A DNA stretch of 64,000 nucleotides from Hemiscyllium ocellatum (Eukaryota), in the NCBI RefSeq assembly GCF_020745735.1, contig NW_026867443.1:186001-250000 (forward strand). The letters are read 5' to 3'. Shown here in pieces: positions 19,548-58,436 of the stretch; position 1 is the stretch's first letter, and each line of letters begins with the position of its first letter. The notes under the pieces are model-generated. The model was given only the letters and a program-made list of their open reading frames with translations, was not told the DNA's origin and made no database searches. A program made the position numbers and the translations under genes.

Positions 19548-19740
19548 GGAGAAGGCAGCGAGGAGAATTGTTCCAGAAATTCAAAATCAGGAGGGGCCTG
19601 GAACAGAGTAAATCGGGAGAAAATGATTCCACTTGTGAAAGGATTGAGACCGAGAGGCCACAGATTGAAAGTAATTGGAATAGTAAGAAAAGTGAGATGA
19701 GGGAAAACATTTTCAGCCAGTGGGTGGTTAAGGTGTGGAA

Positions 19741-20889: not shown

Positions 20890-20924
20890 TCAGTCTGAGC
20901 TTGGTTCCTTTACCGAACGTAAGC
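20890..20924 (-). CDS. IGKJ: Ig kappa-type J segment, cluster 1 (J1), LTFGKGTKLRL
   Basis: G CTT ACG TTC GGT AAA GGA ACC AAG CTC AGA CTG A, with the FGxGT motif and a phase-1 GTAAGT donor at 20889-20884. Directly flanked by a 23-RSS. Confidence 0.97.
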
Positions 20925-20963
20925 CACAGTGAGAGCTCCCAGTGCAGAGGCTGTACAAAAACC
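20925..20963 (+). other. 23-bp-spacer recombination signal sequence of J1
   Basis: CACAGTG (20925-20931), 23-nt spacer, ACAAAAACC (20955-20963): perfect consensus. Confidence 0.98.
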
Positions 20964-21401
20964 TCAGCTCTCTGCTTTCCTCTTATCACTGTCAACCTCT
21001 CTCTGTCTCTGTCTGTCTCTCACTCACTCTCACCCTCTCCCTGTCCCTCTCTGTCTCTCCCTCATTCATGTGTCTTTCTCTCTCCGTCTCTCTGGGTTGT
21101 TTCCAGCTGGGCACAGGAGGTTTGTGAAATTTATTTTTCGATGTTAAATCTTGCAGCAGCTCTTCACATGTGGCCATGGAGTGTAAGAGGGAAACTAGAG
21201 GCCTTCAGTGAGCGTTGAAACACCACAGGGATTGGAGTGTGTCGTGGACAGTGGCAATCCCAGTTTGGGGTAATTTGATCAGTTTCATTTAGATCTAACT
21301 GTGGATATATCAGTTCAGGCAGTAAGACTGTGTGTCCATTATTATACATTTTATGTAACTGTGGGATGTGTCAGTACAGGAGGTAGTGCTTTATGTATTG
21401 A

Positions 21402-21429
21402 GGTTTTTGTACAGCTCTGTATCACTGTG
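21402..21429 (-). other. 12-bp-spacer recombination signal sequence of V1
   Basis: On the minus strand CACAGTG-ATACAGAGCTGT-ACAAAAACC: perfect consensus. V-12/J-23 is the kappa configuration. Confidence 0.98.
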
Positions 21430-21728
21430 TAGAGGGTAGCTGTAATCCTGCATACAGTAATAATCAGCGACATCCTCATTCTGAACGTTGCTGATTGTCA
21501 GGGTGTAACTGGTCCCTGATCCACTGCCGGTGAATCGCTCGGAGACTCCTGTGAATCGAGTTGTTGCATCATAGATCAGGAGCGAGGGGTTCTGACCTTC
21601 TCGCTGCTGGTACCAAGCAAGGTTGCTGCTAATGCTTTGACTGGCCGTACAGGTGAGTGTTGCAGTCTGGCCCAGTCCCACTGACAGCACCGGGGGAGAC
21701 TGGGTCATGGTGATGTCCCCACTGATAC
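21430..21728 (-). CDS. IGKV: Ig kappa-type V exon, cluster 1 (V1), unrearranged
   Basis: Acceptor CCCCTCAG, then the open frame (G)[99 protein letters not shown] ending at the heptamer. Confidence 0.97.
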
Positions 21729-21914
21729 CTGAGGGGTCAGAGAGAAACACAGTGAAGTCAGAACTGTCACAGAAAGAGCCTGTCAAATGAGAGATTGTTG
21801 GAGACACTGAGCATTCCTCTGGTTTCAGCATTTTCCCTTCAATCACAAGTCAGTGGAATTGGAGTGAAATGGAGAGCAGCTAAAAATTCAAGGTGGAAGG
21901 AGAGAGATTTGTAC

Positions 21915-21963
21915 CTGCGACACAGAATGCCAGGGGCCAGATCAGCTGGATGTGTGAAATCAT
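21915..21963 (-). CDS. Leader (signal peptide) exon of V1, MISHIQLIWPLAFCVA-G
   Basis: 49-nt exon with CACC-ATG start and a phase-1 GTACAA donor. 186-nt intron to the V exon. Confidence 0.93.
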
Positions 21964-22023
21964 GGTGTGTGCTCCTGTCCCTGTGCCTGGTTCCTGATAA
22001 ACTCTCCCTTCACTGGGCTCTGC

Positions 22024-22121
22024 TTTATAAAGCTGCAGCCTGTGAGAGTCTGACTGGGTGTTCCTCAGTATGTAAATGGCATCAGGCAGAGAGAGCCACA
22101 TCAGCCCCTCACACTTCCTCT
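22024..22121 (-). promoter_or_regulatory. V1 promoter: PU-box, octamer variant and TATA
   Basis: Minus strand: AGAGGAAGTG (22121-22112), ATTTACAT (22077-22070, one mismatch to ATTTGCAT), TTTATAAA (22031-22024). Confidence 0.75.
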
Positions 22122-23199
22122 TCTCTCTCTCTCTCTCTATCTCACTCTCTTTGTCTCAGAGAGTGATTGATGTGAACAGCACTGAATGAGGCCATTTGGC
22201 CCATTGTGTCTGTGCTGGTAAACAAAGATCTGATGACACTAATCCCATCCTCCAGCTCTTGGCCCATTACCCTGGAGGCTACAGCAACACAAGGGAATAT
22301 CTAAACACTGCTCCAATGTCACGAGAGTTTGTGACTCAACCAGTCTTTCAGGCAGTGAGTTCCAGACTCCCACCACCCTCTGGGTGAGAACATTTCTTCT
22401 CAACTTTCCTCTCACTCTCCAACTCTCCAACTCGCCTGGCCATGGACTCACTCGTGTTCAGAACGATGAGAGGGGATCTGATTGAAACATAAAAAATTGT
22501 AAGAGGGCTGGGCAGGGAGGAGGGTTCCCCTGGTTGGGGAGACTGGAACCAGGGGACACAGGCTCAGGGGGATACAGGGTAGACCATTTAGGACTGAGAT
22601 GAGGAAACATTTCTTCACTCAGAGGGTGGTCAACCTGTGGATTTCTCTACCACTGAAGGCTGTGGAGGATAAGAAACTGAATATATTCAAGAAAAAGAGA
22701 GAGATAATTGTTTTGCATTTTAACAGCTTGAAGAGAATGGGGAGAAGGCAGGAGTATGGCTTTGAGAGAGAGGATCAGCCATAGATCATAGAATGCCTAC
22801 AGTGTGGAAACAGGCCATTTGGCCCGACAAGACCACACCGACCCTCGAAGAAATGATGACATTCAAAAATTGATACAGCCACGATCATACTGAATGACAG
22901 AGCAGACTCAAAGGGCCGAATGGCCTACTGCTGCTCCAAGTTTCTACGTGCCCATGTCTGTGTTACCTACAATCTCTGTCCCAGGTTATGAAGTCCTTTA
23001 CTCATGTAAAAAGTGCCATCCTACCCACCCTATCACTATCCTGAATAATCTTATCTCTCTCTATCAGGTCCCTTTTACGCCTTCACTGCTCAAAGCTCAC
23101 ATTCAGGCAGCATCCTGGGAAATCTCCCCTGTACCCTCTCAGGTACAATCACATTCTTCCCAGAGTGTGGTGACCAGGACCTGTCGCTCTCTCTCTCTG

Positions 23200-23920
23200 A
23201 CTCACATCTGCCATTTCTTGCTCTCTACCTCTATCTATCTCTCCCAATGTTAATCTCTTTCATGTTCTCTCTCGCTCTCTCTCTCCCCCAGTCTCTCTCT
23301 CTCTCTCTCTCTCGCACGCACACTCTGTCTCATAGCCACTCTCTCCAACTCACTGATGCTTTCTCACTCCATCTTATCATCTGTTTCTCCATCTCTCACT
23401 GTCTCTGTTACTCGCTCCCTCTCTCACTTCAATTAAAAGCCTCCAATTGTTACCTGTCACTCTCTATTCCTCCCTCTTTCTCTCTCCTTCCCTCTCTACC
23501 TCCCAATTTACAGTTTCTCTCCCTCTCTCTCTGTCATTATAAATCTACCCATAATCATCTCTCTCCCTCAAACTCAACCCTACCCTCCCTCTCAACTCTC
23601 TTCATGCTTAGTCTCACACCCATCCTGTCTCTCACTCTCTCTCTCCTTGTCTCTTTGTCTCTCTCCATCCCTCTCAGTCACTCTGACTCACATCTTGTTT
23701 CTCTCTCTATCCCTCAACCTCACCATTTCTACCTCCATCTACCTCTCTCTTGGTCCTCTCACGTATCTTACACCGTATCAGTTGCTCATTCCTCTATCTC
23801 TGTCTCTCTCTCACTTTCTTTCTTTCTTTCTTTCTCTCTCTCTCACACACAAACACACACACACACAATTTTTCACTCCATTTCTCTCTCTGTCTCACTG
23901 CTCTCTCTTTCTGACAATCT
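23200..23920 (+). repeat. (TC)n-rich polypyrimidine low-complexity tract
   Basis: Long CT-rich run with interspersed (CA)n. It accounts for the S/L-rich ORFs 23247-23939 and 23647-23985. Shorter inverted homologue at 48050-48420. Confidence 0.9.
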
Positions 23921-24759
23921 CCTGGGTGGTGCCAGTTGAATGCAGGATAAATCTCCCTCTACTCTGCCCCACTAATGGATGTTAACCTTTGCCCCCTGTC
24001 TTCCCCTGGAGTAAGGCCCTATTTCCACTATGACCAGGGTTTGGCCTCTCTCAGGAAGATGGACAGATTCTGGTCAAATGAAGGGCAGTTCTGTGCTGTT
24101 CTGTGCTGTTGGCCTATTCTCACTGGGGACTGATTTGGACACAAAGCTCATTCCATGAAGGCCCAGCAGAGAGAGGAGATCCTCAGGCCATCAGTGTCAG
24201 CTGGAGGGACAGGACAGGCTCTGACCCACTGACCCATCCTGTCCATTCACAACATGTTCCAATCCCTTCCCCTCTCCTTCCCCTTCCATGGTCAGTCTTC
24301 TCTGAAATGGAGTGGTCCCTTCCCTGTCTCACACCAAGGAGGAGATGGACAGATATTTAATGGGTAATGGGTTAAAGGATGATGGAGAGTGGGCAGGAAA
24401 ATGGAGTTGAGTCTGAGATGGGATCAGCCATGATTGTATTAAATGGTGGAGTGGGCTCGAGGGGCTGAATTGCCTGCTCCTGCTCCTAGTTCTTATCTTC
24501 CTCCACCCACTCCCCCATCCCTCTTACTGCAATTTTGTGAACATTCTTGGAATGTTTGGACATTGAAGGCGCTATGTGAATTCAAGATTTGTGTGGATTT
24601 AATGTGGGGACAGAATTGCGCACGGGCTGTGATAGCTCCTGCGGTTGAATATCCTGCTCGCAGGCTTCCGCCTTCCATATACAGAATGGCGAAGTGGGGG
24701 ATGTCGGAATGTACTGCCGGGGTACACGGCACTGTCCTCTAGCAATGTGGTTGACTCTC

Positions 24760-26560
24760 TAGTGCCCTCTGAAATGGCCGAGCAAGGCTCTCAGTTGTAT
24801 CAATTATGACAATGTTTCAACAAAGAAATGAGACCGGACGGACCACAGGCATCGATCTAGACACCGAAAAGACAATGACAGAAACAGTCCTGTCTACCCT
24901 GCTCTATCCTCCTTACTGACATCTGGGAGCTAGTCCCAAATTCAGGAGAGCTGTCTTACAGATGACTCAAGCAACAGATTGACACAGTCATACTCACAGA
25001 ACCATACCTTACAGACAATGTCCCAGACACCACCATCACTGTCCCTGCATGTGTCCTGTCCCACCAGAAAGGCAGACCCAGCAGAGCTGATGACACAGTG
25101 GGCTACAGTCAGGAGAGAGTTACCCGGGGAAATCTCAAAGTTGGCTCTGGACCCCGTGAAGAATCATGAAACTAAGTTTAACATGGGCGAGGAAACCTCC
25201 TGGTGATTACAAGGTATCTTGCTTCCTCGGCTGACGAATCAGTCTCTCCTGGATGTTGAACTGCATTTGGAGGAAGCATTGAGGGTGATGACAGCAGAGA
25301 GTGTACTCTGGGTGGGAGGTTTCAACGTCCACCACTGAGAGTGGCTCGGCAGCAGCATTACTGATCGAGCTGGTTGGTTCCTCATGGATGTAGCTGAGGG
25401 ACTGGCTCTGCAGCTGGAACCAAAAAGATGGAAAAAGATGCTTGAACCCACCCTCACAAATCTTGTGGCTGTAGATGCATCTATCCTTGACAGTATTGGT
25501 AAGAGTGACCATCACACAGTCCTTGTGGAAACAAAGTCTGACCTTCACAGTGAGAATCCCCTCTATTGTGTTGTGTGTTACTATCACCGTACTAAATAGG
25601 ACAGACTCCGAACAGATATTGCAACTCAAGGCAAACTCGTAAATGGGGATGATTGCCAAAAATTGCACAATGCTCAGCACTATTCTCAACTTTTCAGATA
25701 CTGAAGCAGTCCACGTGCAAATGCAATAATATGTGGACACTATCCAGGTTTTGTCTGAGAAGTGACATTTCCCATTGGTGCCGTGCAAATGCCAGCCAAT
25801 TACCATCACCAATAAGAGACAATCTAAACATCGCCCCTTGACAAATGCAATAATATGTGGACACTATCCAGGTTTTGTCTGAGAAGTGACATTTCCCATT
25901 GGTGCCGTGCAAATGCCAGCCAATTACCATCACCAATAAGAGACAATCTAAACATCGCCCCTTGACAATCAATGCTATTACCATCACTGAATCCCCACTA
26001 TCAACATTCTTGAGGTACCATTGACCAGAAACACAACTGGATTCACCAAAGAAACACAGTGGTTACAAGAGCAAGTTAGAGGCTAGGAATACTACATCCA
26101 GTAACCCACCTCCTGACCCCCCCCCCCCCCCAAAGCCTGTCAACCAAGTCAGGAGTGTGAGCAAATACTCCCCACTTGCCTGGACAGGTGCAGCTCCAAC
26201 AACACTCATAGATTGATAGTGTCACAGAGTCATACAGCACAGAAACAAACCCTTAAGCCAAACTTCGACATGCTGACCAGGTTTTCTGACGTGAACTCAT
26301 CTTATTTGCCTGCATTTCACACATATCCCTTGAAACCTTTCCTATCTATGTCTATTGTATCCTATGTCTTTCTTATCCACTCAAAAATCTTGATACCATC
26401 CAGAGCAAAGCAAACTCCTTGATTGGCATCGCATTCTCAAAGCATCAAAACTCACTGTCACTGACGCTCCAGAGCAGCAGTGTGTATTATTGATAAGAAG
26501 CACTGCAGAAATTCATCACCAATCTTCAGATAGCATCTTCCAAACCCATGGACAAAAATA
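24760..26560 (+). mobile_element. Decayed LINE (L2/CR1-related clade) endonuclease and RT remnant
   Basis: Reads VGGFNVHH*EWLGS...DSIGKSDHHTVLVET (APE GDFN and SDH motifs). A same-orientation relative at 44620-45130 is an independent insertion. Confidence 0.7.
25718..25965 (+). repeat. Perfect 124-bp tandem duplication
   Basis: Units 25718-25841 and 25842-25965 are identical, with CAA microhomology at the junction. Confidence 0.95.
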
Positions 26561-27319
26561 GAAATTGCAGGAAAAGCTCAGCAGGTTTGGCAGCATCTTG
26601 GAGAGAAATCAGAATTAACATTTTGGGTTGAGCATGAAATATTAACTCTGATTTCTCTTCACAAATGCTGCCAGACCTGCTGAGCTTTTCCAGCACTTTC
26701 TATTTTTGTCTCGGATTTACAGCATCTGCAGTTCTTTTGTTTTCCCTCCAAAAGAACTTCCATTTAGAACAAGAGCAGCAGATACATGGGAACACTGTGA
26801 GCTGCAAGTTCCCCTCGAAAAAGCTTAGCATCCTGACTTGGAAATATGTCACTGATCCCTCAGCCTTGCTGGGTTAGAATGCTGGCATTGTGGGTCAACT
26901 TACAGCTTGTGGACGATAACAATTCAAGATGGCAGCTTCCCACCACCTACTCCAGGGTAACTAGGGACAGGGTAAAAAATGTTGACCCAGCCGGTGAAGC
27001 CCACTTCCCACAGGTGAATATGCAAAACCAAATGAAGTGTCCCTCAGGAGGGGAGAGGGAATGTTCAGGATCCTGAACTCCATTTCCCAGCCCAGGCAGT
27101 TTGTCTCCCAATGAATGAATGAGATACCAATTTGAAGCCCAGGTTCAGGGCAGTCTCACTCTGTGGACATGAGGTTTATGAGAGGGAATTGGAGATTGAG
27201 CTGTAAAGGAAAGATTTGCTGGGTTACGGGGAGAGAGGGGGGAAGCAGTGGGACTAACTGGGTCATTCAAAGGATTGATGGGCTGAATGGCCTCCTCCTG
27301 TACTGTCAGATTCCAGGGA

Positions 27320-27560
27320 GTGCAGATGGTTCACAGTTTTCTCCCGTCTCAGTAACAAACATCCAGCTGCTCCGAGCTCCTTCTTTCACTTCCCCTGTTG
27401 GTGAAGTTTCAACCTTGTGCTCTGACAGTCTTTGCAGTTATTTGTTGCACTGGGGCTTTCTGCTGTGGTCAGAATCTCTAATAATAAGTGTCCAATCAGT
27501 GACAATCACAGCAGCTAAGAGCAGTCAGGACTGGGGAGCCAGGCTCACTGGGAAACACAT
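27320..27560 (-). promoter_or_regulatory. Candidate upstream B-cell enhancer, cluster 1 copy (EICE, RUNX, E-box)
   Basis: GGAAGTGAAA (minus strand, 27393-27384), TGTGGT 27464-27469, CAGCTG 27364-27369. ~95% ungapped identity to 44161-44390. Confidence 0.5.
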
Positions 27561-28699
27561 TGGGAAGATCCAAGTCATCCTATTCAGCTCCCAGTACAAA
27601 CTCCATCCCTCTCCCTGAGCACTGTCTGCAGTTCAACCAAACTCTTAACAATTTTGCCCTCATCTTTGGGGCTGATTTGAGGCACAAATCCTCCACATAT
27701 CAACGACTGAAAATCTCAACCATGTTTTTGAGACCATTCCAATGTTATCCAGGCCCACATCACAGCTATTGACTTCCGTAAACATCAGCTCATCCCAAAC
27801 TCTGCTGTCTGTGTTCAAACTCACACCAAGTCCACCCCACACCCCTGCCCACACCTCCCCACCCCACCATGACCACCACAATCCTCACTGACTGACATCA
27901 GCTCCTGGTCCAGCAATACCTCGATTTTCAAATTCTCATCCCTGTTCTCAATCTGCTCCCTGTACTTCCACCAGCCCTATCTCTGTGACCTCCTCCAAGG
28001 TGCCTCACACAGTGTGATCGATAATCTTGGATGTATGTCTCTCTGTTTCTTCATCCAAGTCATTGAGAAATATTGTGAAAAGCTGAGGTTCCAGCACAGA
28101 TCCCTGAGAATAGCACTACTCACATCTGGCTCATTGGAACACATGCACATTATCCTTCCTCTCTGTCTCCTAGGCAGACCCATTCCTGACCCAAGGTAAA
28201 TGCATTTCTCAAATTCCATCCAATTCCATGATTTGGAGATGCCGGTGTTGGACTGCCGTGTAAATGTTAAAAATCACAGAACACCAGGTTCGAATGCAAC
28301 AGCTTTTTTTGGAAGCATCAGCGTTTAGAGTGCTGCTCCTTCATCAGATGGTTGTGGAGTGTAAGATCTGAATCAATGTTTCTTTTGTGGAACATTCTTA
28401 AATGTCTTTTGGAATTCCCTATAGACAATAGCCATCGACATTCCCTTATATCCCACATGAGTGAGCTCCTAACAAAGTCTAACCCAGTTAGTTAAAGATG
28501 TCTGAACCTTTGTCAATCCATGCTGTCTATCTCGGACCAGTTCATATTTGTCCGTTATTCTGTCCCTAAAAACAGACTCAATCACTTCCTGACAACAGAC
28601 ATTCAATGGAGATGTTCATTATAATTGAGGCTCGTAAACAGCTAGCATTGACATGAGGGGCTGAACAGCCTCCTCCTGTGCTGGCACCTTCTCTGTCTC

Positions 28700-31400
28700 C
28701 TTGACGGAAATATTTTACAGATTAAAAACTAAAGACCAGCAGCAAATTTTAAAATATAAATTAAAAACTCCTCAAATAATTTCCACATACAGGGCCGGGC
28801 GATGTGTAGTAATTGTACGATAGGGAAGCTGGTGGAGCCCATTGTAGCTCAGAGTGACCACATCTACAGCAAGTGTTGGTTGCTCAAGGCACTCCAGCTC
28901 AGAGTGGTGTTGAGGATCCAGTTGTTGTTGTCTGTGTCGGGACCAACAACATCAGCAAAAATCGGCAAAAGGTCCTATTTGGACAATATCTGGAAAGCTA
29001 TCAGAAGGATATTGATTAAACAGATGGAGAGAAATAAGAAAGAGGTGAGTACAGCATCAGTGCTGAGGAACAGATTCCAGTGAATGGGCCAAATACGAGT
29101 TCTATATACGAATGCACGGAGCGTAAGGAATAAATACAATAATCTGCAGGCACAAATTCAAATTTAAGATTGTGGTATCGGATCAATTACTGAGCCATAG
29201 TTGCAGAATCATTCAGATTGGGAACGATATCTATCGGGTTAGAAGGTTCACAGGATGGATATGGGAAATGGCAGAAGAGGTGGAGCAGCTTTATTGATGA
29301 GGAAAAAAATGGCTTCAATGGTGAGGGAGGTCATAATGAGGAGAAAACATTCAGTGGAACTGAGGAGCAGGAAAGGATCGAAAACTGTAGTAGATGTTGG
29401 ATACAGACCCCCCTGACAGCAGCTCTGAGGTGCTGGATTGTATATATACAGAAATTAGACAAGTGTGTAGCAAAGCCAGTGTATTATTAATGGGGAAGTT
29501 TAACTTTAACTTAGATTGGGAGACAGACAAGCCCTCTGTCAGAAAGGTAGTGAATTGCTGCTGTGTGTCCAGAATAGTTTCCAACAGCAATAGGTCCTGG
29601 ATACAACAAGGGGACAAGCAATATTGGAATTAGTAATGAATAATGAGCCAGATTTAGTTCGTAACTATTTGTGCATGAACATTTATCAAATAGTGATCAT
29701 AACATGATCTAGTTTAGTGTCGCATTTGAAAGTAAAAAGCATGAATCAGCTGCTAGAGTTTGAGATTAAGGTAAGACTGACTTTAATGAGATGTGACAGA
29801 AACTGTCCACAATAAACTGGGAAAATCTGCTCATGGGTAAAACAACTGAAGAACAGTGGGGAATATTTAAAGGAACATTCAACACAAAACAAAGCCAGTT
29901 TATACCTGAGAGGGAAATGCGAACAAACAACAATGGTCAATTAAAGAGATAAGGGAAAGAATAAAATGTTTAAAAAAAGCTAACAGAAAAGCAAAAAATA
30001 AGGACAGATTCCGCTGAATGGGAAGAATACGAAAGGGCCCCATATCAGCTTCTAAGAGCTACCAAAAGGGATTCTGAAAGGAAACATGTAACAAAATCAA
30101 TAAGGAGAAATGTTACAGTTCCATAAAAGGGAAGCTGGGAGGTCAGGAGCAATGTTGGCCATTAAAAACTGAAAGTGAGGGATATTGTCAGTGACAATGG
30201 GGAAATGCCAGCCATGTTAAATAAATACTTTACCTCAAGATTTGCAGTAGAAAAGGAAGAGGACTTGCCTGAAGTCCCAAAGGAATTAACAGAGGATCTG
30301 TGTCAGGGACTGATTAGATTCCATGCAGTGTGCAAACATGCCTTTTGGCCCAACCAGTCCACACTGACCCTCCGAAGAGTAATCTATCCAGACCCATTTT
30401 CCCTCTGACTAATGCAATTAACACTATGGGCAATTTAGTATGGCCAATTCACCTGACCTGCACATCTTTGGATAGTAGGAGGAAACCCATGCAGACAATG
30501 TGTAAACTCCACACAGGCAGTTGCCCAACGCTGGAATTGACCTGGAACTCTGGTGCTGTGAGGCAGCAGTGCTAACCATTGTGTCACCTGAATAAAGTTA
30601 ATGTCAATATAACATGTGTAATAAGGAAAATAATGGAACTAAAGAGTGACAAATCCTCAGGACCTGAGAGTGATAAAGTAGTAATAGACCACATTGCAGA
30701 TACCCTGACTATAATCTTTCAGAGTTACCTGGATTCAGGAGTCGTACCGCTGAACTGGAAAATGGCAAATTTCATTTCACATTTAACAAGGATGTTAGAG
30801 AAAAGCCAGGGAATTACAGGTCACTCAGCCAACGTTTGTGGTGTGGAAATTGTTGTAGTCTATAATCAAGGATGGGGTAACTGAAGACCTTGAAAATGGT
30901 CAGTTACTCAGGGAGAATCAGCATGGATTCATGACAAGTTGGTCATGGTGAAAAACCACATTGAACATTGTTGAAGAGGAAACATAATTACTGGACACAG
31001 TAATGTCAATGGATGTTGTTTATAGGGACTTCCAGAAGGCATTTGATAAAATCCCATGTAAGAAACTGTCAACTCAGTTAGAAATCCACAGAATTTAAGC
31101 TAAAATACTGCCATACCGAAATTGGTTGAGTGACAGGTGACAGAAAATAGGGATCATGGATAAGTGCTGAAATCAGCAGGATGTGACCAGTGGTGTCCAA
31201 TAGGAATGTGTGCGCACACCTCAATTATTTACATTATTTAATAATGCATTGGATAATGGCAGAGAAAGTCAAATACTCTAGTTTGCTAATGACACAAAGT
31301 TAGGCAGCTTTGTAGGTAGTGTTCACAGAGTCAGAGAGTCAGCATTCATCCAGTGCAATCTTTAACAGAGTATAATTTATCTTTGACATAGAACTCCTTG
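28700..31400 (+). mobile_element. Old CR1 LINE (esterase ORF1 end, then ORF2), decayed
   Basis: DPVVVVCVGTNNISK (SGNH-esterase motif), then LYTNARSVRNK (endonuclease start) and RT remnants. Contains a SINE at ~30312-30590. Confidence 0.75.
30312..30590 (-). mobile_element. HE1-type V-SINE, internally deleted
   Basis: Reverse complement has TGGTTAGCACTGCTGCCTCACAGC, the V-SINE core and the tail. Confidence 0.75.
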
Positions 31401-31518
31401 ACTCCATCTCTCTCACTCTCACTCTCTCTCCCACCCCTCTCTAACTCAGCTGCATAGATCTCACTCTGAGTTCCATCCCTCTTTCTCTGTCCAAGCTCTA
31501 TCCCCCTCTCTTTTAGTG

Positions 31519-31560
<42 letters not shown>

Positions 31561-34965: not shown

Positions 34966-34969
34966 ATTG

Positions 34970-40800: not shown

Positions 40801-40839
40801 GTTCTTGTGCTGTAATTTTCATTGCTCTTTGTTCTTTGA

Positions 40840-43500
40840 ACTGAGGAAGTTCAAAGGAACAGAGTGATCTTGGGTGCTTCTCCACTGATCCCTGAATATG
40901 GCAAGACAGGTTAACAGAGCAGTTATGAAGGCATATGGGACACTTGCCTTTGTCATTTGAGGTATTGGTTATAAAAGCAGGAAGATATGTGGCAGTTAAG
41001 CAGAACATTGGTGAGGCCATAGCTGGAGTACTGTGTGCAGTTCAGGTCACCACACTGTTGGAAGGATGTGATTGCACTGGATGGGGTGCAGAGGGGAATC
41101 ACCAGGATGTTGTGTGGGATGGAACCTCTCAGTGATGAAGAGAAATTGGATCAGCTCGGGTTGTTTTCTTCAGAGCAGAGAAGGTGGAGGGGGGACCTGG
41201 TAGAGGTGTATAAGGTTTAGATTAGATTACTTACAGTGTGGAAACAGGCCCTTCGGCCCAACCAGTCCACACCGACCCGCCGAAGCGCAACCCACCCATT
41301 CCCCTACATTTACCCCCCTTTACCTAACACTACAGACAATTTAGCATGGCCAACCCACCTGACCTGCACATCTTTGGACTGTGGGAGGAAACCGGAGCAC
41401 CCGGAGGAAACCCACGCAGACACGGGGAGAATGTGCAAACTCCACACAGTCAGTTGCCTGAGTCGGGAATTGAACCCAGGTCGCTGGAGCTGTGAGGCAG
41501 CAGTGCTAACCACTGTGCCACCGTGCCGCCCCAAGGTTATGAGGGGAATGGACAGGGAGGAGAGAAAGCAGCTGTTCTCCTTCTTGGGAGGGTCAATAAC
41601 AAGTTGGCTCACATTCAATGTCAAAGATAGGAGGTTTCAATATGTTTTGAGGAAAGTGTTTTTTACCCAGAGGGTGGTGGGGGTCTGAAATGCACAGCCT
41701 GGGAAAGTAGTTGAGGTGGGAAACCTCACAAACTTTATAAAGTTTGGGTGACCAGTTGAAATGTCATAACATTCAAGCTATGGGCCTCCTGTTGGAAAGT
41801 GGGACTGGTACACGTTTAGTGCAGTTTGGCTGGTACACAGTTAATGGGCTGAAGGGCCTCTTCTACACTGTGTGATTTTATGATTCTGTTGTGTGCAGTT
41901 TGGGTTTCCTTATCTGAGGAAGGATGTCCTGGCTGTGGAGAGAGGGCAGCGAAGGTTTACCAGACTGATTCCTGGGATGACAGCACTTAGACCTGATGAG
42001 AAACTGGATCAGTTAGGACTATATTCACTGGGGGATAGAAGATTGAGAGGAATCACATTGAAACCTGTAAAATCCTAACAGGACAAGACCGGAAAACACA
42101 GGAATTATGTTCCTGATGACTGGAGAGTCCAGAACCAGGAATTACAGTTTAAAGAAAAGGGAAAGGCCATTTCGGACTGAGATGAGGAGACATTTCTTTA
42201 GCCAGAGAGTGGGAAGCTAGTGGAATATTCTGTCACAGAAAGCAGTTGATCCCAAAACATTAAAAGTTTTAAAGAAGGCGACAGGTATAGATCTTAGGAC
42301 GAAAGGGATTAAAGGTCATGGAGAAAAAGTGGGAACAGGGGACTAAGTTGGATGATCAGCCATGGTCATATTAACTGGCAGAGCTGACTCGAAGGGCTGA
42401 ATGGCCTCCTCTTGCTCCCAGTTCCTCTGTTTCTATGTTTGAGAGACTGTTCATAAACATGGAAACATATGGAATTATAGAGTCATAGAGTCATCGAGTC
42501 CTACAGCACAGAGACAGGCCCTTTGGTCCAAACAGGACCGTGCTGACCAAAATATCCATCCACACTAACCCCATTTCCCTGCATTTTGCTCATATCCTTC
42601 AAATTGCATACTGTCGATGTATTTGTCCAAATGCCTTTTAAATGTTGTTAATGTACCCGCCTCAATCACTTCAGCTGGCAGCTCATTCCATACGACTACC
42701 ACCCTCTGTGTAAAAATGTTGCCCCTCAGGTTCTCGTTTATTCTAACCTTCAACTGATGCCCTCTAGTCCTTGATTCCCCAACCCTGGGACAAAGACTGA
42801 GTGCATTCACCCTATCCATGTCTCTCAAGATCTTATACAATTCAAAAAGATTCCCCTTTAGTCTCCGACATTCTTAAGAATAATGTCCTAGCTTGCCTAA
42901 ACTCTCCCAAAAACTCAGATGTTGAAACCTGGCAATATCCTTGTAAATTTATTCTGCACTCTTTCCAGTTTAATAATATCCTTCATATAACAAGGTGACC
43001 AAAACTGAGCACAATACTCCAAGTGCAGACTCACCAACGTCATGTACAATTGAAACATAACTTCCCAACTTCTACACCCAGTGCCCTGACTGATGACGGT
43101 CAGTGTGCCAAAAGCCTTCTTCACTGCCCTGTCTAACTGTGACTCAACTTTCAGAGAATTGTGCACCTGAACTCCGAGATCCCACTGTTCCACTACAGTC
43201 CTTAAGGCTTTACCATTCACCATGAAGCTCCTACCTTGATTTAACTTTCTAAAATGCAAGACCTCATATTTATCTACATTAACCTCAATTTATCATTTCT
43301 TTCCCCACTTCCACACCTGATCAAGGTCCTGCTACAATATCTGATAACCTTCTTCATTGTCCACAATACTGGCTATTGTAATGTCTTCTAAATCATTGAG
43401 ATTGATAACAAACAATCATGGGCACAGCATCAATCCTGAGGAACTCCACTAGATACAGGCCTCCAGTCTGACAAGTATCCTTCCACTATGTCCCTCTGCT
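40840..43500. mobile_element. CR1 3' fragments in both orientations
   Basis: RT C-terminal ORFs on + (41035-42440) and on - (42565-43259). Confidence 0.75.
41218..41532 (-). mobile_element. Full-length young HE1-type V-SINE with 6-bp target-site duplication
   Basis: Complete tRNA-like head GGCGGCACGGTGGCACAGTGGTTAGCAC, B-box, core and (TAATC)-type tail. AAGGTT at 41212-41217 and 41533-41538. Inserted in a CR1 tail. Confidence 0.9.
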
Positions 43501-44160
43501 TTCTCCCGTTCTCGCCAGTTAGGGAAAAATATTTATCTTTGGTCAGAAATTAGTTTGGAGGTAGGAGACAGAGAGGAGGGATAATGTGTGTGCTCTCCAA
43601 TGAGCAAAATGTGGATAGTGGTGACCCCAGGGAATTGGGCTGGAACCTCAGCACTTCACGATATTTCTAAATGACTTGGATGAAGGAATAGACAGCCATA
43701 TATCCAAGATTGTTGATCACACTGAGTGAGGCAGTTTTGAGGAGGTTACAGAGATAGGGAGAGTGGAGGACAGGGAGGGACTTGAGAACAAGGATGAGAA
43801 TTTAAAAATCGAGATGGTGCTGGACCAGGAGCCAATGTAGGTACAGGGTGCAGGGGGTTGGAGGAATGGGATTTGGTGCGAGTTTGGATATGGGCAGCAG
43901 AATTTGGGATGAGCTGAAGGTCATGGAGGGCAGTGGCGGTGATGTGTGCAAGCACAACATTGGCATGGTCATGTTTGGAATCCCATGGACATGACAGAGA
44001 TTTTCAGTGGCTGATCTTTGTGAGATGGAGGATATGGGGCTCAGATCAGCCCCAAAGATGAGACAAAGTTTGTAAAGAGTCTGGTTGAGCAGCAGATAGT
44101 GCTCAGGGAGAGGGATGGTGTTGATAACGGGATCTGAAGGGGATGGCTTTGACCTTCCCA

Positions 44161-44400
44161 ATGTGTTTCCCAGTGAGCCTGGCTCCTCAGTCCTGACTGC
44201 TCTTAGCTGCTGTGATTGTCACTGATCAGACACTTATTATTAGAGTTTCTGACCACAGCAGAAAGCCCCAGTGTAAAAAATAACTGCAAAGACTGTCAGA
44301 GCACAAGGTTGAAACTTCACCAAAAGAGGAAGTGAAAGAAGGAGCTCAGAGCAGCTGGACGTTTGTTACTGAGATGGGAGAAAACTGTGAACTGTCTTCG
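44161..44400 (+). promoter_or_regulatory. Candidate upstream B-cell enhancer, cluster 2 copy
   Basis: GAGGAAGTGAAA 44326-44337, ACCACA 44252-44257, CAGCTG 44352-44357. Confidence 0.5.
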
Positions 44401-46079
44401 CTGCCTGGAACCTGACAGCACAGGAGGCTGGTTCTGGGATTTATCTTTTCAGAAACAGCACAGTGATGGAAAAAAGGACAGTCACTCTCTCACAAACACA
44501 CACGCCTGCCCTCGGAGATGAGAAACAGAATCCAGCAGCAGCTCTGTCTCCAAGCTGTGAAACCTGCACAGAATTGTTCCCTCATTCAGTTTTTAACTGA
44601 CAGAATAGACCAAGCAGGGGAGGCAACACAGTGGTGTGTACCGTCAGAAGGGAGTTGCCCTGGGAGTCCTCACCATTAACTATGGAATCCATGAAGCCTC
44701 ATGACAGCAGGTCAAACATGGGGAAGGAAACCTCCTGCTGATTACCACATAGCACCGCCCTCCCCTCCAACCTCAACTGAGCAGTCAGTCCTCCTCCATG
44801 TTGAACAACACTTGGAGGGAGGACCGAGGGTGGGAATGATGCAGGATATACTCTGAGTAAGGGACTTCAAAGTCCACCATCAAGAGCTGCTCAGAAGCAT
44901 CACTACTGAGCAAACTGGTCAAGTTCCACCTGATTCACCTGCTAGACTGGACCTGGGGCAGGTGGTGAGGGAATCAACAAGAGGGAAAAACATACTCACT
45001 ATCACCCTCACCAATCTGCCTGCTGCTGGTGTATCTGTCCATGACAGTATCAGTAAGAGTGACCATCGCACAGACCGTGTGGAGACAAAATCCCATCTTC
45101 ACATTGAGATTACCTTGCATTTTGTTGGGCAAGAGATATGGGATGTCAGGAAGAACTTTTTTTAGCAGCAATTGGTAATGACTTGGAAATTAGTGCTCAT
45201 TCAGGTGAGGCAGGTGAAGACACTCAGTGATTGCAATGGCAGATTGGATGGGCTCTTGATGGAAATAAACCTGCAAGGCTCTGGGGGTCGAGTAGGGGAG
45301 GGGGTGGGACTGACTGGATTGCTCCATGAAATGACAGCATTTACACACTTAGTCTCACCTTTACACAATGACTGGGAGAAACAGACAAACCAGTTCACAG
45401 AAGTGTTTTCTCAAGCAAAACACTCTTGAACCAACTCAGAGAACACACCAGTCTAGATTTACCAGAATAAATCAGCAAATCAATGGCAAGGGAACAGCGA
45501 ACCAAAAGTGATGGAACTGAACAGTATATTCAATAGCACAAAAAACGAGAGAGGGAGGGATGAAGGGCAGGAAGTCAGAGAGTACACTCTCGGGGTCTGA
45601 AGGCTCTGCTGTCAATGGTGGGATGGAGGAAGCAGCAATGGGTAGGAGACCAGAGACAGAAGGTGGAATGGGGAGGGAGGGAATGTGAGTCTACAGCAGG
45701 ACACAGAGTGAGGGAGGAGGGAGGCCATGGAGGCAATTGGCTGGCAGTGAGTTCGGGGTCATTCTTGAATGACGTCAGATGTCAGACAAGGAAGGGACCC
45801 TCCATATCAGACAAGTTGGGGTTTATGGAATGTGGCTTCAGGAAGCTGGGAGAGGACATTGAAATCATAGAGTCAGGAGGTAGGATGAGCAGGAATTTGG
45901 GTTTCTGTGGTCAAGAGGCTGAGGTAGTGCAGAGACAAACAATGTTGTGCAAATTGAAATAAAAGACCTACGTAATGGACAGGATGTGGGGTTACAGCTC
46001 AGGTACTGGACAGTGCGGTGGGAAGGAGGCCCATGTTTACTGTTTATTGGTCCTATGGGATGGTGCCCCATGTTTACAT

Positions 46080-47310
46080 CATCATAGAGTCATAGAGGTT
46101 TACAGCGTGGCATCAGGCCCTTCAGCTCTACTCATCCATGCCGACCAAGTTTCCAAACATGAACTAGTCCCATCTGCATCCGTTTGGCCCAATCCTCTCT
46201 AAATCCTTCCTATCCATGTTCCTGTACAATTGTCCTTGAAATCTAGTAATTGTACTCCCCTCTACCATTTCCTGTGGCAGCTTATTACACATACACACCA
46301 ACCTCTGTGTGAAAAGGTTGTCTCTCAGGCCCCTTCTAATTCTTTCCCCTCTCAACTTAAATCTATTCCTTCTCATACTGGACTCTCCTACCCTGGGGGA
46401 AAAAAAAACTTTCGCTATTCACCTTATTTATGGCCCTAATGATTCTATAAACCTGTCTAAGATCAGCCCTTAATCTCCTGCATTCACTGTAAAAATCTCT
46501 CGGCCTATCCATCCTCGCCTTATAATTCAAACTCACCAACCTTGGTAACATCCCTGTTCATCTTTCTTTTATCCAAACCAGTGTAATAACTTCCTTCCTA
46601 TAGCAGGGTGAGCAGGAATGTACACAGTGTCCAAATGTGGCCTTCCCAATGCCTTGTACAGCTGTAACATGATGTCCCAGCTCCTGTACTCCCTGCTTTG
46701 ACCAGTGAAGGTGAGCGTGCCAAATACCTTCTTCACCACCCTGTCTACCTGTGACACCACTTCCAAGGAACTATGCACCTGTACCCCTCAGTCTCTCTGT
46801 TCAACAACACTCCCCATGGCTCTACCATTAATTGTGTAATTCCTGCCCTGGTTGATCTTACCAAAATGCAACTCCTTGCATTTATCGAAATTAAGCTCCA
46901 TCTGGATTTGTTGCCCCACTGGCCCAGTTGATGAAGATGACATTGCATTCTTAGATAACCTTCTTCCCTGTCCATGATGCCAACAATTTTAATGTCAGCC
47001 ACAAACTCACTGACCATTCCTTCTATTTTCTCAAACAAATTGTTCATATAAAATGATGAACAACAGTGGATCCAGGATCGATTCTTGTGGCAGACGGCTG
47101 GTCACTGGTCTCCAGTCTGAAGAACAACCCTCTCTCACCAGCCTCTGCCTCCTTCCATCAGGCCCATTTTATATCCAATTGGTTAGCTCTGCCTGGATCC
47201 TCTGTGACTAAGCAGTCTACAATGGGGAACCTTGTCTAAGGCCTTGCTAAAGTCCATGTCGACGATATGTACTGATCTATCTTAAGCTATCTATTTCTTC
47301 AAAAACTCCA
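46080..47310 (-). mobile_element. CR1 LINE RT fragment inserted into a minisatellite
   Basis: Minus-strand RT motifs (SEFVADIKIVG; VVKKVFGTLTF; DNLFTQRLV). Minisatellite units lie on both sides. Confidence 0.75.
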
Positions 47311-47344
47311 CTATCCACTTGTCTCCATTAGAAGGACAAGTGAA

Positions 47345-47600
47345 TAGGTGGCCCACATTTACTGGTCTTCTTGGAGTATCCAGTCAGAAGGAGGTCCATG
47401 TTTACTGGTCTCCTTTGGAGAGTCCATTAGAAAGGAAGCCAACATTTCCTGGTCTTTATTGGAGGCTCAAGCAGGAACAATGCCCATGTTTACTGGTCTC
47501 TATTGGGAGCTTCAGTGGGAAGGAGGCCCATGTCTCTCCATGGGGCACTCTCGTGAACTGACGTCCATGTTGACTGGAATCTGTTGGAGAGTCCAGTGCA
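47345..47600 (+). repeat. Degenerate ~43-bp minisatellite, about 6 units
   Basis: The CCATGTTTACTGGTCTC...GGAAGGAGG unit recurs at ~47356, 47397, 47443, 47485, 47529 and 47566, with further units at 46015-46080. Confidence 0.7.
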
Positions 47601-48049
47601 TCGTGGACACCATGGTGGGTGTGGGGTTCAGTTCCTTTCTGTTGTAAATGTGTGATGGTCCAAGCGTCATCCCAGTAAAACACCCTGACTCAGAGACTGA
47701 TCGCGGAAGGGGAAGGAGAGGGGAAAGGATTGGAACATGTTGTGAATGGACAGGATGGGTCAGTGGGTCAGAGCCTGTCCTGTCCCTCCAGCTCACACTG
47801 ATGGCCTGAGGATCTCCTCTCTCTGCTGGACCTTCATGGAATGAGGTTTGTGTCCAAACCAGTCCCCAGTGAGAATAGGCCAACAGCACAGAACTGCCCT
47901 TCATTTAACAAGAATCTGTCCATCTTCCTGAGAGATACCAAAACCTGGTCAATGTGGAAATGGGCCTTTACTCCAGGAGAAGACATGCTTCTGGGGTCAA
48001 GGGTTAACATCCATTTGTGGGGCGGAGCAGAGAGAGATTTATCCTGAAT

Positions 48050-48420
48050 TCAACTGTCTCCACCTGGGACACTGTGAGAAAGAGAGAGAAGCGAGACAGA
48101 GAAAGAGAAATAGAGGTCAAGTGGGCTGCGGTGAAGGAGGGAGAGACAGAGGGAGAAATAGAGAGGGGTAGATAACATTTGGAGGCTTTCAATTGAAGTG
48201 AGAGATGGAGCGAGTGACGCAGGCAGTGAGAGATGGAGAAAGATTATGATACAGAGTGAGGAAGCGTGAGTGAGTTGGAGAGAGTGGCTATGAGACAGAG
48301 TGAGAGAGAGGGAATATGAGAGAGATTAACAGTGGGAGAAAGAGATAGATGCAGAGAGATCAAAGTAGCAGATGTGAGACAGAAAGGGGAAAAGAGAGAG
48401 AGAGAGAGAGAGAGGTCCTG
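48050..48420 (+). repeat. (AG)n-rich polypurine tract
   Basis: Inverted homologue of 23200-23920. Confidence 0.85.
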
Positions 48421-49400
48421 GTCACCACATTCTGGGAAAGATGTGATTGTACTTGAGAAGGGGCAGAGGAGATTTCCCAGGATTCTGCCTGGGATGGAGA
48501 GTCAGCTATGAGGAAAGATTGGAAAGGTTGGGGCAGTTTTCCTTGGAGCATTGAAGGTTGAGAGGGACCTGATAGAGAGGTATAAGATAATTGTTGGCAG
48601 TGATATGTTGCATAGGAAGGCACTTTATACAAGAGTAAAGGACTCAATAACCAGGGACAGAGATTGAAGGTAACACAGACATGGACACATAGAAACTTGG
48701 AGCATGAGCAGGCCATTCGGCCCTTTGAGTCTTGTGTGTCATTCAGTATGATCATGGCTGATCCTCTCTCTCAATGCTGTGTTGCTGCTTTCTCCCTATT
48801 TCCTTCATGCTGTTAAAATGCAAAACAACTCTTTTCTTTTTCTTGAATATATTCAGTTCCTTGTCCTCCACAGCCGTTTGTGGTAGAGAATTCATCAGGT
48901 TGACCATCCTCTGAGTGAAGAAATGTTTCCTCATCTCAGTCCTAAATGGTCTACCCTGTATCTCCCTGAGACTGTGTCCCCTGGTTCCAGACTTCCCAAC
49001 CAGGGGAACCTCCTCCCTGCCTGGGCATGTTAGAATTTTATACATTTCAATCAGATCCCCTCTCATCCTTCTAAACTCGAGTGAATCCAGGCCCAGTTGA
49101 GTTGCAGAGTGAGAGGAGAATTGAGGAGAAATGTTTTCAACCAGAGGGTGGGGGGAGTCTGGAACTCACTGCCTGAAAGGCTGGTTGAATCACAAACTCT
49201 TGTGACATTGGAGCAGTGTTTAGATATTCCCTTGTGTTGCTGTAACCTCCAGGGTAATGGGCCAAGAGCTGGAGGATGGGATTAGTGTCATCAGATCTTT
49301 GTTTACTAGCACAAACACAATGGGCCAAATGGCCTCATTCAGTGCTGTTCACATCAATCACTCTCTGAGACAAAAAGAGTGAGATAGAGAGAGAGAGAGA

Positions 49401-49498
49401 AGAGGAAGTGTGAGGGGCTGACGTGGCTCTCTCTGCCTGATGCCATTTACATACTGAGGAACACCCAGTCAGACTCTCACAGGCTGCAGCTTTATAAA
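49401..49498 (+). promoter_or_regulatory. V2 promoter: PU-box, octamer variant and TATA
   Basis: AGAGGAAGTG 49401-49410, ATTTACAT 49445-49452, TTTATAAA 49491-49498. Confidence 0.75.
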
Positions 49499-49558
49499 GC
49501 AGAGCCCAGTGAAGGGAGAGTTTATCAGGAAGCAGGCTCAGGGACAGGAGCACACACC

Positions 49559-49607
49559 ATGATTTCACACATCCAGCTGATCTGGCCCCTGGCATTCTGT
49601 GTCACAG
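49559..49607 (+). CDS. Leader exon of V2, MISHIQLIWPLAFCVT-G
   Basis: 49-nt exon with a GTACAA donor at 49608 and a 186-nt intron. Confidence 0.93.
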
Positions 49608-49793
49608 GTACAAATCTCTCTCCTTCCACCTTGAATCTTTAGCTGCTCTCCATTTCACTCCAATTCCACTGACTTGTGACTGAAGGGAAAATGCTGAAAC
49701 CAGAGGAAAGCTCAGTGTCTTCAACAATCTCTCATTTGACAGGCTCTTTCTGTGACAGTTCTGACTTCACTGTGTTTCTCTCTGACCCCTCAG

Positions 49794-50090
49794 GTATCAG
49801 TGGGGACATCACCATGACCCAGTCTCCCCCGGTGCTGTCAGTGGGACTGGGCCAGACCGCAACACTCACCTGTACGGCCAGTCAATATGTTAGCAATGAG
49901 CTTTCCTGGTACCAGCAGCGAGAAGGTCAGAAACCCTCTCTCCTGATCTATGCTGCAACAAATCGATTCACAGGAGTCTCCGAGCGATTCACCGACAGTG
50001 GATTAGGGACCAGTTTCACCCTGACAATCAGCAACGTTCAGAATGAGGATGTCGCTGACTATTACTGTATGCAGGATTACAGCTGGCCTT
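49794..50090 (+). CDS. IGKV: Ig kappa-type V exon, cluster 2 (V2), open but without a cognate J
   Basis: (G)[98 protein letters not shown]. Conserved Cys/Trp/Cys present. Confidence 0.95.
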
Positions 50091-50118
50091 CACCGTGATA
50101 CAGAGCCATACAAAAACC
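50091..50118 (+). other. 12-bp-spacer RSS of V2 with variant heptamer
   Basis: CACCGTG-ATACAGAGCCAT-ACAAAAACC: heptamer position 4 A>C, perfect nonamer. Confidence 0.93.
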
Positions 50119-58107: not shown

Positions 58108-58436
58108 GCCGTGACAACTCTCAGCCCAAGCTGACCCTGCTGCCCCCCTCCCCAGAGCAGGTCAATGCCAAGGGCACTGCCACCCTGGTGTGCCTTGCCA
58201 ATCACTTCTATCCCGATGAGCTGGAGGTGCAGTGGAAGAAGGACGGTGCAGTCATTTCGGACGGGGATCAGACCAGCAACTACCTGCGAGCTTCGGACAG
58301 CACCTACAGTGTCAGCAGCCTGCTGACCCTCTCTGGGTCTGACTGGGAGTCCAATGCTCACTTCTCCTGTGCCCTCACCCACGTGACCCTCCCCTCTCCC
58401 CTCAGCAAGAGCATCAGGAGATCAGAATGTGTGTAG
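58108..58436 (+). CDS. IGKC: Ig kappa-type constant exon, cluster 2 (C2), open
   Basis: Acceptor CTTGTCTTTCAG, then 329 nt: (S)RDNSQPKLTLLPPSPEQVNAKGTATLVCLANHFYPDELEVQWKKDGAVISDGDQTSNYLRASDSTYSVSSLLTLSGSDWESNAHFSCALTHVTLPSPLSKSIRRSECV*. Confidence 0.96.

What the first reader, a model, noticed from the sequence alone, without database searches (positions are those of the whole stretch)
20890..50118. V2 and J1 satisfy the 12/23 rule in inversional geometry: a two-V, one-J unit across clusters
Seen: on the + strand the order is J1 coding-23RSS ... V2 coding-12RSS, with both signals facing the same way. RAG cleavage at 20924/20925 and 50090/50091 would invert 29,166 bp and place promoter-L-V2 in front of J1-C1. 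Established: inversional V-J joining occurs in mammalian kappa and teleost IgL loci, whereas shark clusters are generally thought to rearrange within a cluster. Inference: a J-less inverted cluster could act as an extra V donor, giving combinatorial diversity (CDR1 YVSNELS instead of SISSNLA) and a step from cluster toward translocon organisation.
Basis: inference. Interest (0 to 1): 0.78.

Follow-up and report, generated by a model that had tools for sequence, protein, structure and literature searches.

The report
Orphan V in head-to-head kappa clusters
Two shark antibody light-chain mini-genes lie head to head; one has lost its J piece. Its V could in principle reach the neighbour's J by flipping 29 kb of DNA, but it shows signs of decay and its use could not be tested, so it is most likely an ordinary dying copy.

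Summary
The window holds exactly two kappa-type V, two C and one J. Cluster 1 (minus strand) is an intact V1-J1-C1 minicluster with perfect signals. Cluster 2 (plus strand) has V2 and C2 but no J.

V2's 12-RSS (50091-50118) and J1's 23-RSS (20925-20963) point the same way. Joining them would invert exactly 29,166 bp and build V2-J1-C1.

New here:
- The likely Chiloscyllium punctatum orthologue of cluster 2 still has its J. The loss is therefore a lineage-specific 230-bp deletion, and it does not end at an RSS border.
- The heptamer CACCGTG is nearly as active as consensus in a published assay. However, a V2-specific 2-bp deletion leaves a CTT coding flank, which was about 30-fold worse in that assay.
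- V2 carries Asp at a Gly that is invariant in all 30 relatives aligned.
- Heptamers have drifted in this cluster's lineage in both species, but not in the other clusters.

My best reading is a recently crippled copy, with at most rare opportunistic inversion.

The scan has already noted head-to-head kappa pairs with this geometry (s1-228448, s1-213783) and another J-less cluster (s1-213640) on other DNA of this genome.

The parts
8644..8972 (-). C1 exon of cluster 1 (C1-set domain, stop included); has QINAKD, GVQ, NAR
   Evidence: (Pfam C1-set 81 bits)
20890..20924 (-). J1 coding segment (LTFGKGTKLRL), followed by donor gtaagt at 20889-20884; the only J in the window
20925..20963 (+). J1 23-RSS, read as CACAGTG-23-ACAAAAACC on the plus strand (perfect consensus)
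20990..21090 (.). GA/CT-rich low-complexity tract between V1 and J1. The homologous tract holds the left edge of the J deletion in cluster 2
21402..21429 (-). V1 12-RSS (CACAGTG-12-ACAAAAACC, perfect), 438 bp from the J1 RSS
21430..21963 (-). V1 gene: leader exon 21963-21915, intron, V exon 21728-21430; CDR1 SQSISSNLA
27341..27540 (.). Core of the conserved block about 5.3 kb upstream of V1
   Evidence: 94-96% identical to its cluster 2 copy, flanks about 80%
44180..44380 (.). Cluster 2 copy of the same upstream conserved block (approximate coordinates), inverted
49559..50090 (+). V2 gene: leader exon 49559-49607, intron 49608-49793, V exon 49794-50090. The reading frame is intact. CDR1 is SQYVSNELS and FR3 is DSGLG. 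The coding end is ...GGCCTT after a 2-bp deletion
50091..50118 (+). V2 12-RSS, CACCGTG-12-ACAAAAACC
   Evidence: assay values in PMC9723617
50411..50412 (+). Junction of the 230-bp germline deletion that removed cluster 2's J, its 23-RSS and the splice donor (AT microhomology)
58108..58436 (+). C2 exon of cluster 2 (intact, stop included); has QVNAKG, GDQ, NAH
   Evidence: (Pfam C1-set 78 bits)

Best explanation
This is a head-to-head pair of kappa-type (NS4/type III) light-chain miniclusters of a hemiscylliid shark. Cluster 1 (V1-J1-C1) is a normal, self-sufficient cluster that joins V1 to J1 by deleting 438 bp. Cluster 2 was crippled by a 230-bp germline deletion that removed its J, the J's 23-RSS and the splice donor. 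The deletion happened after the split from the Chiloscyllium punctatum lineage. V2 and C2 are therefore stranded, and most likely form a young, still-open pseudo-cluster in a large, turning-over gene family. Because V2 keeps its promoter, an upstream conserved block and a usable 12-RSS, RAG could occasionally pair it with the J1 23-RSS and invert 29,166 bp to make V2-J1-C1. I expect this to be rare and not maintained by selection. Shown: the anatomy, the deletion, the orthology and V2's derived changes. Inferred: the low frequency of joining and the lack of selection.
For: - Anatomy and geometry.
- J loss: cluster 1 positions 21120-20816 have no counterpart in cluster 2.
- Orthology: C. punctatum contig L001 matches cluster 2 at 93.3% over 2.7 kb, against 90.1% for cluster 1. 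Site patterns support it as well: 40 sites fit orthology, 7 fit species and 4 fit the remaining grouping.
- L001 still has a J and a 23-RSS. The deletion is exactly 230 bp, has AT microhomology, and has no RSS border at either edge.
- Decay signals on V2's own lineage:
  - a 2-bp deletion at the coding end gives a CTT flank, where the four relatives whose DNA I hold have a purine at position -1. In SARP-seq a CTT flank gave 3% of signal joints against 92% for an AC flank (PMC9723617);
  - the heptamer has A4C;
  - all 6 V2-unique exon changes are nonsynonymous;
  - Gly to Asp falls at a residue invariant in 30 of 30 relatives, from sharks to mammals, and Ser to Leu falls at a Ser/Gln position;
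  - V2's exon substitution rate (1.45%) is about the same as its noncoding rate (1.75%).
- Heptamer drift is confined to this cluster's lineage: 4 of 21 positions changed, against 0 of 42 in the other clusters (Fisher p = 0.010).
- Reviews say shark V-J joining is known only within clusters (PMC5192425; PMC12227049).
- Unchecked earlier notes of this scan call such pairs, and J loss, routine in this array.
Against: - V2 (leader and V exon) and C2 are fully open.
- Pfam V-set scores are equal for V2 and V1 (59.2 against 60.1 bits).
- The promoter region with its octamer-like ATTTACAT and TATAAA is identical in V1 and V2.
- The upstream conserved block is 94-96% retained.
- CACCGTG followed by AT scores 0.952, against 1.144 for consensus, in SARP-seq.
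- The C exons are far more alike than their flanks (2.5% against about 14.5% divergence, p = 4e-11).
- The flank effect was measured with core mouse RAG on plasmids and may be weaker in vivo.
- The substitution counts are small (6:0 against a pooled 41:20 gives p = 0.09), and V exons of this family evolve about as fast as noncoding DNA even in intact clusters.
- No expression data were available either way.
Confidence: 0.6

Rival explanations
1. One reading: V2 is a working extra V donor. It regularly joins J1 by a 29-kb inversion and is expressed with C1, adding combinatorial diversity. It is kept by selection and represents a step from cluster to translocon organisation.
For: - A correct 12/23 pair in inversional geometry on one chromosome.
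- Intact V2 reading frame, promoter and upstream block.
- A heptamer close to fully active in SARP-seq.
- A divergent CDR1 and CDR2 that would add specificity.
- Inversional inter-cluster light-chain joins are documented in zebrafish (PMC3014032).
- From my own knowledge, inverted V segments near J-C are used in mouse (V-kappa, TRBV31).
Against: - Asp at a Gly invariant in 30 of 30 relatives, and Leu at a Ser position.
- A poor CTT coding flank created on the V2 lineage.
- V1's RSS is 438 bp from J1, about 66 times closer.
- There is only one J, so there is no second attempt or editing gain.
- No excess conservation of V2 exons on its own lineage.
- Signals of this cluster have drifted in both species.
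- No V2-J-C protein exists in a 5.8-billion-protein collection, although that blank is weak.
Confidence: 0.15
2. V2 is rescued by, or serves, something outside this pairing. It might join a J of the next cluster beyond the right end of the window, or act as a germline gene-conversion donor for neighbouring V genes.
For: - Earlier notes say clusters alternate in orientation. A tail-to-tail neighbour to the right would then present a 23-RSS in the same inversional geometry (inference).
- Within the V exon, 3 sites group V1 with V2 against the two C. punctatum genes, compared with 4 such sites in about 1,330 non-exon sites. This hints at exchange between the V genes.
Against: - No further V, J or C lies in 1-8.6 kb or 58.4-64 kb, and no good 23-RSS lies downstream of V2.
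- The same decay signals count against any recombination role.
- The conversion signal is only a handful of sites.
Confidence: 0.1
3. The J-less state is an assembly error, or a deletion carried by only one haplotype, and not a fixed feature of the species.
For: Tandem and inverted gene arrays are hard to assemble.
Against: - The junction is clean, with well-aligned homologous sequence on both sides (92% identity either side).
- The other V2-specific changes are independent of the deletion.
Confidence: 0.05

Closest known systems
Cartilaginous-fish kappa (NS4 / type III) V-J-C miniclusters
   Same: One leader-V with a 12-RSS, one J with a 23-RSS a few hundred bp away, and one C exon, all in one orientation. 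Cluster 1 fits in every respect. The proteins are 85-89% identical in V to nurse shark, Hemiscyllium and Chiloscyllium kappa chains.
   Different: Cluster 2 lacks J. The two clusters lie head to head only about 27.6 kb apart, whereas reviews describe shark clusters as distant and joining only within themselves (PMC5192425).
Zebrafish inversional rearrangement between (VL-JL-CL) clusters (Zimmerman et al. 2008, PMC3014032)
   Same: A V of one cluster lies in opposite polarity to the J-C of a neighbouring cluster, with kappa-type 12/23 signals, so that inversion would place the V in front of the other cluster's J-C.
   Different: In zebrafish the joins were shown with cDNA clones, and there are several J segments, so the retained segments allow secondary rearrangements. 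Here nothing is shown, there is a single J, and that paper itself argued sharks probably lack such joins.
Inversional V-J joining of inverted V-kappa segments in mouse and human
   Same: Same signal geometry and the same outcome: a coding joint, with the signal joint retained on the chromosome (PMC3014032 discussion; general knowledge).
   Different: Mammalian kappa is a translocon with many V, several J and one C. Inverted V segments there are a regular, selected part of the repertoire.
Non-functional and germline-altered shark light-chain clusters (Lee, Fitch and Hsu 2000, PMC2193156; review PMC5192425)
   Same: A member of a large cluster family that cannot rearrange on its own because of a germline change.
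   Different: Here the change is a plain 230-bp deletion of J rather than a RAG-made germline V-J join, and the V and C reading frames are still open.

Membership tests
Kappa-type light-chain minicluster of cartilaginous fish | V segment with leader, V-set domain and a 12-bp-spacer RSS | tested here: met
   V1 and V2 both:
Kappa-type light-chain minicluster of cartilaginous fish | J segment with a 23-bp-spacer RSS a few hundred bp downstream of V, in the same orientation | tested here: not met
   Met for cluster 1 (438 bp). Not met for cluster 2: there is no J or 23-RSS between V2 and C2
Kappa-type light-chain minicluster of cartilaginous fish | A single C1-set constant exon downstream, close to known shark kappa C | tested here: met
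   C1 and C2 are intact, score 81 and 78 bits on Pfam C1-set, and are nearly identical to Hemiscyllium kappa models
Inversional V-J recombination substrate | One 12-RSS and one 23-RSS on the same DNA molecule pointing in the same direction, with V and J in opposite transcriptional orientation | tested here: met
   inverted segment 20925-50090 = 29,166 bp
Inversional V-J recombination substrate | Signals and coding flanks competent for RAG cleavage | tested here: inconclusive
   The J1 RSS is perfect. V2's heptamer with spacer start CACCGTGAT scores 0.952 against 1.144 for consensus, but its CTT coding flank is of the class that gave 3% against 92% of signal joints (PMC9723617). That assay used mouse core RAG on plasmids, not shark RAG
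Inversional V-J recombination substrate | Coding joints or signal joints observed in lymphocyte DNA or RNA | not testable with these tools
No V2-J-C protein was found in the protein collection
Immunoglobulin pseudogene or decayed cluster | Loss of an element needed for assembly or expression | tested here: met
   The 230-bp deletion took J, its RSS and the donor site
Immunoglobulin pseudogene or decayed cluster | Disrupted reading frames or loss of conserved structural residues | tested here: inconclusive
   There are no stops or frameshifts in V2 or C2. However, V2 has Asp at a Gly invariant in 30 of 30 relatives

The most novel reading that the evidence does not exclude
Shark kappa clusters are not strictly autonomous. 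In head-to-head pairs about 28 kb apart, a V of one cluster can join the J of its partner by inversion. A J-less cluster such as this one would then be kept open because its V is used that way. That would give a cluster-organised species some combinatorial V choice, and a living intermediate toward the multi-V organisation of bony vertebrates.
Probability: 0.15. Interest if true: 0.7.

Novelty: new member of a known kind. Interest (0 to 1): 0.3.

Why it matters
Textbook accounts say that shark antibody genes rearrange only within a cluster, partly because clusters were thought to be far apart and all in one polarity. This pair shows a geometry in which that rule could be broken, and a V that could be used in no other way. 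It is therefore a clean natural test case: any V2-J1-C1 transcript would prove joining between clusters in a shark. On present evidence, though, it looks like one more decaying copy in a large gene family, so its main value is as a PCR or repertoire target rather than as a discovery.

Tried and rejected

2. Transcript-derived proteins. I ran two searches of the 5.8-billion-protein collection with V2. One was set up so that full-length L-V-J-C chains were within the length range. They returned only germline gene models and old cDNAs of other sharks, the best at 89% identity. This blank says little.

3. Hemiscyllium ocellatum loci for P0016, P0029 and P0030. The DNA could not be fetched because the file was too large. 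Two of those gene models lack a J-like stretch, but they look like read-through predictions and I drew no conclusion from them.

4. dN/dS. V1 against V2 gives 0.42 in the framework regions and 0.93 in the CDRs; C1 against C2 gives 0.30. The counts are too small, and V exons of intact clusters evolve as fast as noncoding DNA, so this does not discriminate.

5. A RAG-made deletion or an open-and-shut joint as the origin of the J loss. Rejected: neither deletion edge lies at a heptamer border, the edges show a 2-bp microhomology, and the left edge lies in a GA-rich tract.

6. Other partners for V2 inside the window. None was found; the remaining RSS-like hits have 3 mismatches and no coding segment beside them.

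7. Literature on the orientation of shark light-chain arrays. No paper in the held library describes head-to-head kappa clusters in sharks.

The N run at 18326-18458, in the J1-C1 intron, was left alone.
Full report
WHAT IS THERE

The window carries two kappa-type light-chain miniclusters lying head to head. Motif scans and tblastn find exactly two V, two C and one J in the 64 kb.

Cluster 1 is on the minus strand.
- The V1 leader starts at 21963 and the V exon ends at 21430.
- Its 12-RSS is perfect and lies at 21429-21402.
- J1 coding lies at 20924-20890 (LTFGKGTKLRL, donor gtaagt).
- J1's 23-RSS is perfect and reads CACAGTG-23-ACAAAAACC on the plus strand at 20925-20963.
- The C1 exon lies at 8972-8644, after a 12-kb intron full of retroelement remains. 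That intron also holds an N run at 18326-18458, which I left alone.

Cluster 2 is on the plus strand.
- The V2 leader lies at 49559-49607 and the V exon at 49794-50090.
- Its 12-RSS, CACCGTG-12-ACAAAAACC, lies at 50091-50118.
- The C2 exon lies at 58108-58436.

The RSS patterns are far beyond chance. Shuffles expect 0.01 and 0.00 matches, against 2 and 1 found, and each match abuts a coding end.

On the plus strand the order is J1 coding, 23-RSS, then V2 coding, 12-RSS, with both signals pointing rightward. Cleavage at 20924/20925 and 50090/50091 followed by inversion of 29,166 bp would put promoter-L-V2 in front of J1-C1. It would also leave a heptamer-to-heptamer signal joint next to 50091. 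The quoted CDR1 and C-region differences are correct.

Direct joining without trimming would be out of frame for V2-J1, and equally for V1-J1. Both therefore depend on junctional processing.

WHY CLUSTER 2 HAS NO J

The two clusters are an inverted duplication.
- From about 0.8 kb upstream of the V genes (22795 / 48740) to about 280 bp past the V RSS they are 92% identical.
- They are 92.5% identical again from about 75 bp past the J donor onward.
- Roughly 300 bp of cluster 1 that hold the J and its RSS have no counterpart in cluster 2.

The best protein matches are Chiloscyllium punctatum V genes (89%), Hemiscyllium ocellatum kappa models (87%) and nurse shark NS4 (85%). The host is therefore a hemiscylliid or close relative.

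I fetched three C. punctatum contigs. Contig L001 matches cluster 2 at 93.3% over 2.7 kb without a break, against 90.1% for cluster 1. L003 is closer to cluster 1 (92.0% against 88.9%).

In a four-way alignment, 40 sites group cluster 2 with L001 and cluster 1 with L003. Only 7 sites group by species and 4 group the other way. The duplication therefore predates the species split, and L001 is the likely orthologue of cluster 2.

L001 still has a J (FTFGKGTKLRL) with a perfect nonamer. The loss in the window is therefore lineage-specific.
- It is a deletion of exactly 230 bp, with its junction at 50411|50412.
- It shows a 2-bp AT microhomology.
- Its left edge lies in a GA-rich tract, and neither edge lies at a heptamer border.

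It is an ordinary deletion, not a RAG product.

COULD V2 STILL RECOMBINE?

In favour:
- The promoter region, with an octamer-like ATTTACAT and TATAAA, is identical in V1 and V2.
- A block about 5.3 kb upstream of each V is 94-96% identical between the clusters, while its surroundings are about 80%.
- In the SARP-seq recombination assay, CACCGTG followed by AT scored 0.952 against 1.144 for CACAGTG. Heptamer position 4 was the least selective position (PMC9723617).

Against:
- The same paper found that a CTT coding flank gave 3% of signal joints, against 92% for an AC flank.
- V2's coding end is ...GGCCTT, because of a 2-bp deletion found only in V2. V1, L001, L002 and L003 all have a purine next to the heptamer.
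- That assay used mouse core RAG on plasmids, so the size of the effect in a shark B cell is unknown.

IS V2 MAINTAINED?

V2 and C2 are open, and their Pfam scores equal those of V1 and C1. Even so, every one of the six V2-unique nucleotide changes in the V exon is nonsynonymous.
- One puts Asp at a Gly that is invariant in all 30 relatives aligned, from sharks to mammals.
- Another puts Leu where the relatives have Ser (25) or Gln (5).

On the V2 lineage the exon substitution rate (1.45%) is about the same as the noncoding rate (1.75%).

The recombination heptamers of this cluster's lineage have drifted in both species.
- V2 has CACCGTG.
- The V of L001 has CACAATG.
- The J of L001 has CACTTTG.
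- The three V and three J heptamers of cluster 1, L002 and L003 are all consensus.

That is 4 of 21 positions changed against 0 of 42 (Fisher p = 0.010).

None of these tests is strong alone. The 6:0 ratio gives p = 0.09, and V exons of intact clusters in this family also evolve quickly. The strong conservation of the C exons relative to their flanks may simply date from before the J loss. Taken together, the signals point to relaxed constraint rather than to a V kept for use.

KINETIC ARGUMENT (INFERENCE)

V1's RSS lies 438 bp from J1's, and V2's lies 29 kb away in inverted orientation. There is only one J, so V1 and V2 compete for a single event. An inversion would strand V1 in turn, and there is no second attempt as there is in mouse kappa or zebrafish. 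I therefore expect V2-J1 joins, if they occur, to be a small fraction of J1 rearrangements.

COMPARISON WITH WHAT IS KNOWN

Reviews state that shark V-J joining occurs within clusters and not between them. They also state that segments share one orientation (PMC5192425; PMC12227049).

The zebrafish study that first showed inversional inter-cluster light-chain joins argued that sharks probably lack them, because of distance and polarity (PMC3014032). A head-to-head pair 27.6 kb apart weakens both of those arguments. I found no paper in the held library that describes this layout in sharks.

Unchecked notes of this scan say that such pairs are routine in a roughly 200-copy array of this genome. 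They also say another cluster has lost its J through a deletion of about 228 bp. The similar size may mean a shared origin or a deletion-prone tract; I could not check this.

WHAT COULD NOT BE DONE

The decisive test is reads that join V2 to J1-C1, or the signal joint itself. Protein databases held no repertoire data for this species, and Hemiscyllium DNA was not fetchable.

VERDICT

- The indirect evidence favours an ordinarily decaying cluster whose V may at most be used rarely.
- I give 0.6 to decay with at most rare inversion.
- I give 0.15 to a selected V-donor role.
- I give 0.1 to other partners or roles.
- I give 0.05 to an assembly or haplotype artefact.

Noticed in passing
window 20990-21090; L001 about 2680-2760; L002 and L003 homologous positions: A GA-rich low-complexity tract lies just upstream of the J 23-RSS nonamer in every cluster examined, in both species. 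The left edge of the 230-bp J deletion lies in it. Another J-less cluster noted elsewhere in this genome lost about 228 bp, so the tract may be deletion-prone.
   Followed up: partly
window 27341-27540 and about 44180-44380: A block about 5.3 kb upstream of each V is 94-96% identical between the two clusters, while its surroundings are about 80% or unalignable. It is a candidate cluster-specific regulatory element. It is also the subject of another note, s1-195812.
   Followed up: partly
L001:2840-2900 (C. punctatum BEZZ01019071.1): The C. punctatum orthologue of cluster 2 keeps its J. However, its 23-RSS heptamer has two changes (CACTTTG in canonical orientation), its donor site reads GTAAGG, and its V heptamer is CACAATG. 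The same cluster may therefore be weakening independently in a second species.
   Followed up: partly
window 8644-8972 and 58108-58436 with flanks: The C exons differ at 8 of 324 bases (2.5%), while the surrounding aligned intron and 3' flank differ by about 14.5%. This indicates strong purifying selection or gene conversion on C since the duplication.
   Followed up: partly
window 21650-21728 and 49794-49870 (FR1): At three FR1 sites V1 and V2 share a base that differs from the base shared by both C. punctatum genes. This hints at sequence exchange between neighbouring V genes within a species.
   Followed up: no
window 14700-20230 (J1-C1 intron): Cluster 1's J-C intron is about 12 kb, against 7.7 kb in cluster 2. 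The difference comes from inserted repeats with reverse-transcriptase-like open reading frames (for example 19825-20217, minus strand). The intron also holds the N run at 18326-18458.
   Followed up: no
proteins P0016 and P0030 (Hemiscyllium ocellatum gene models): Two annotated kappa light chain-like models run from the V exon through RSS-derived or unrelated residues straight into C, without a J-like FGXG motif. They may be prediction artefacts or further J-less clusters. The DNA could not be fetched.
   Followed up: no
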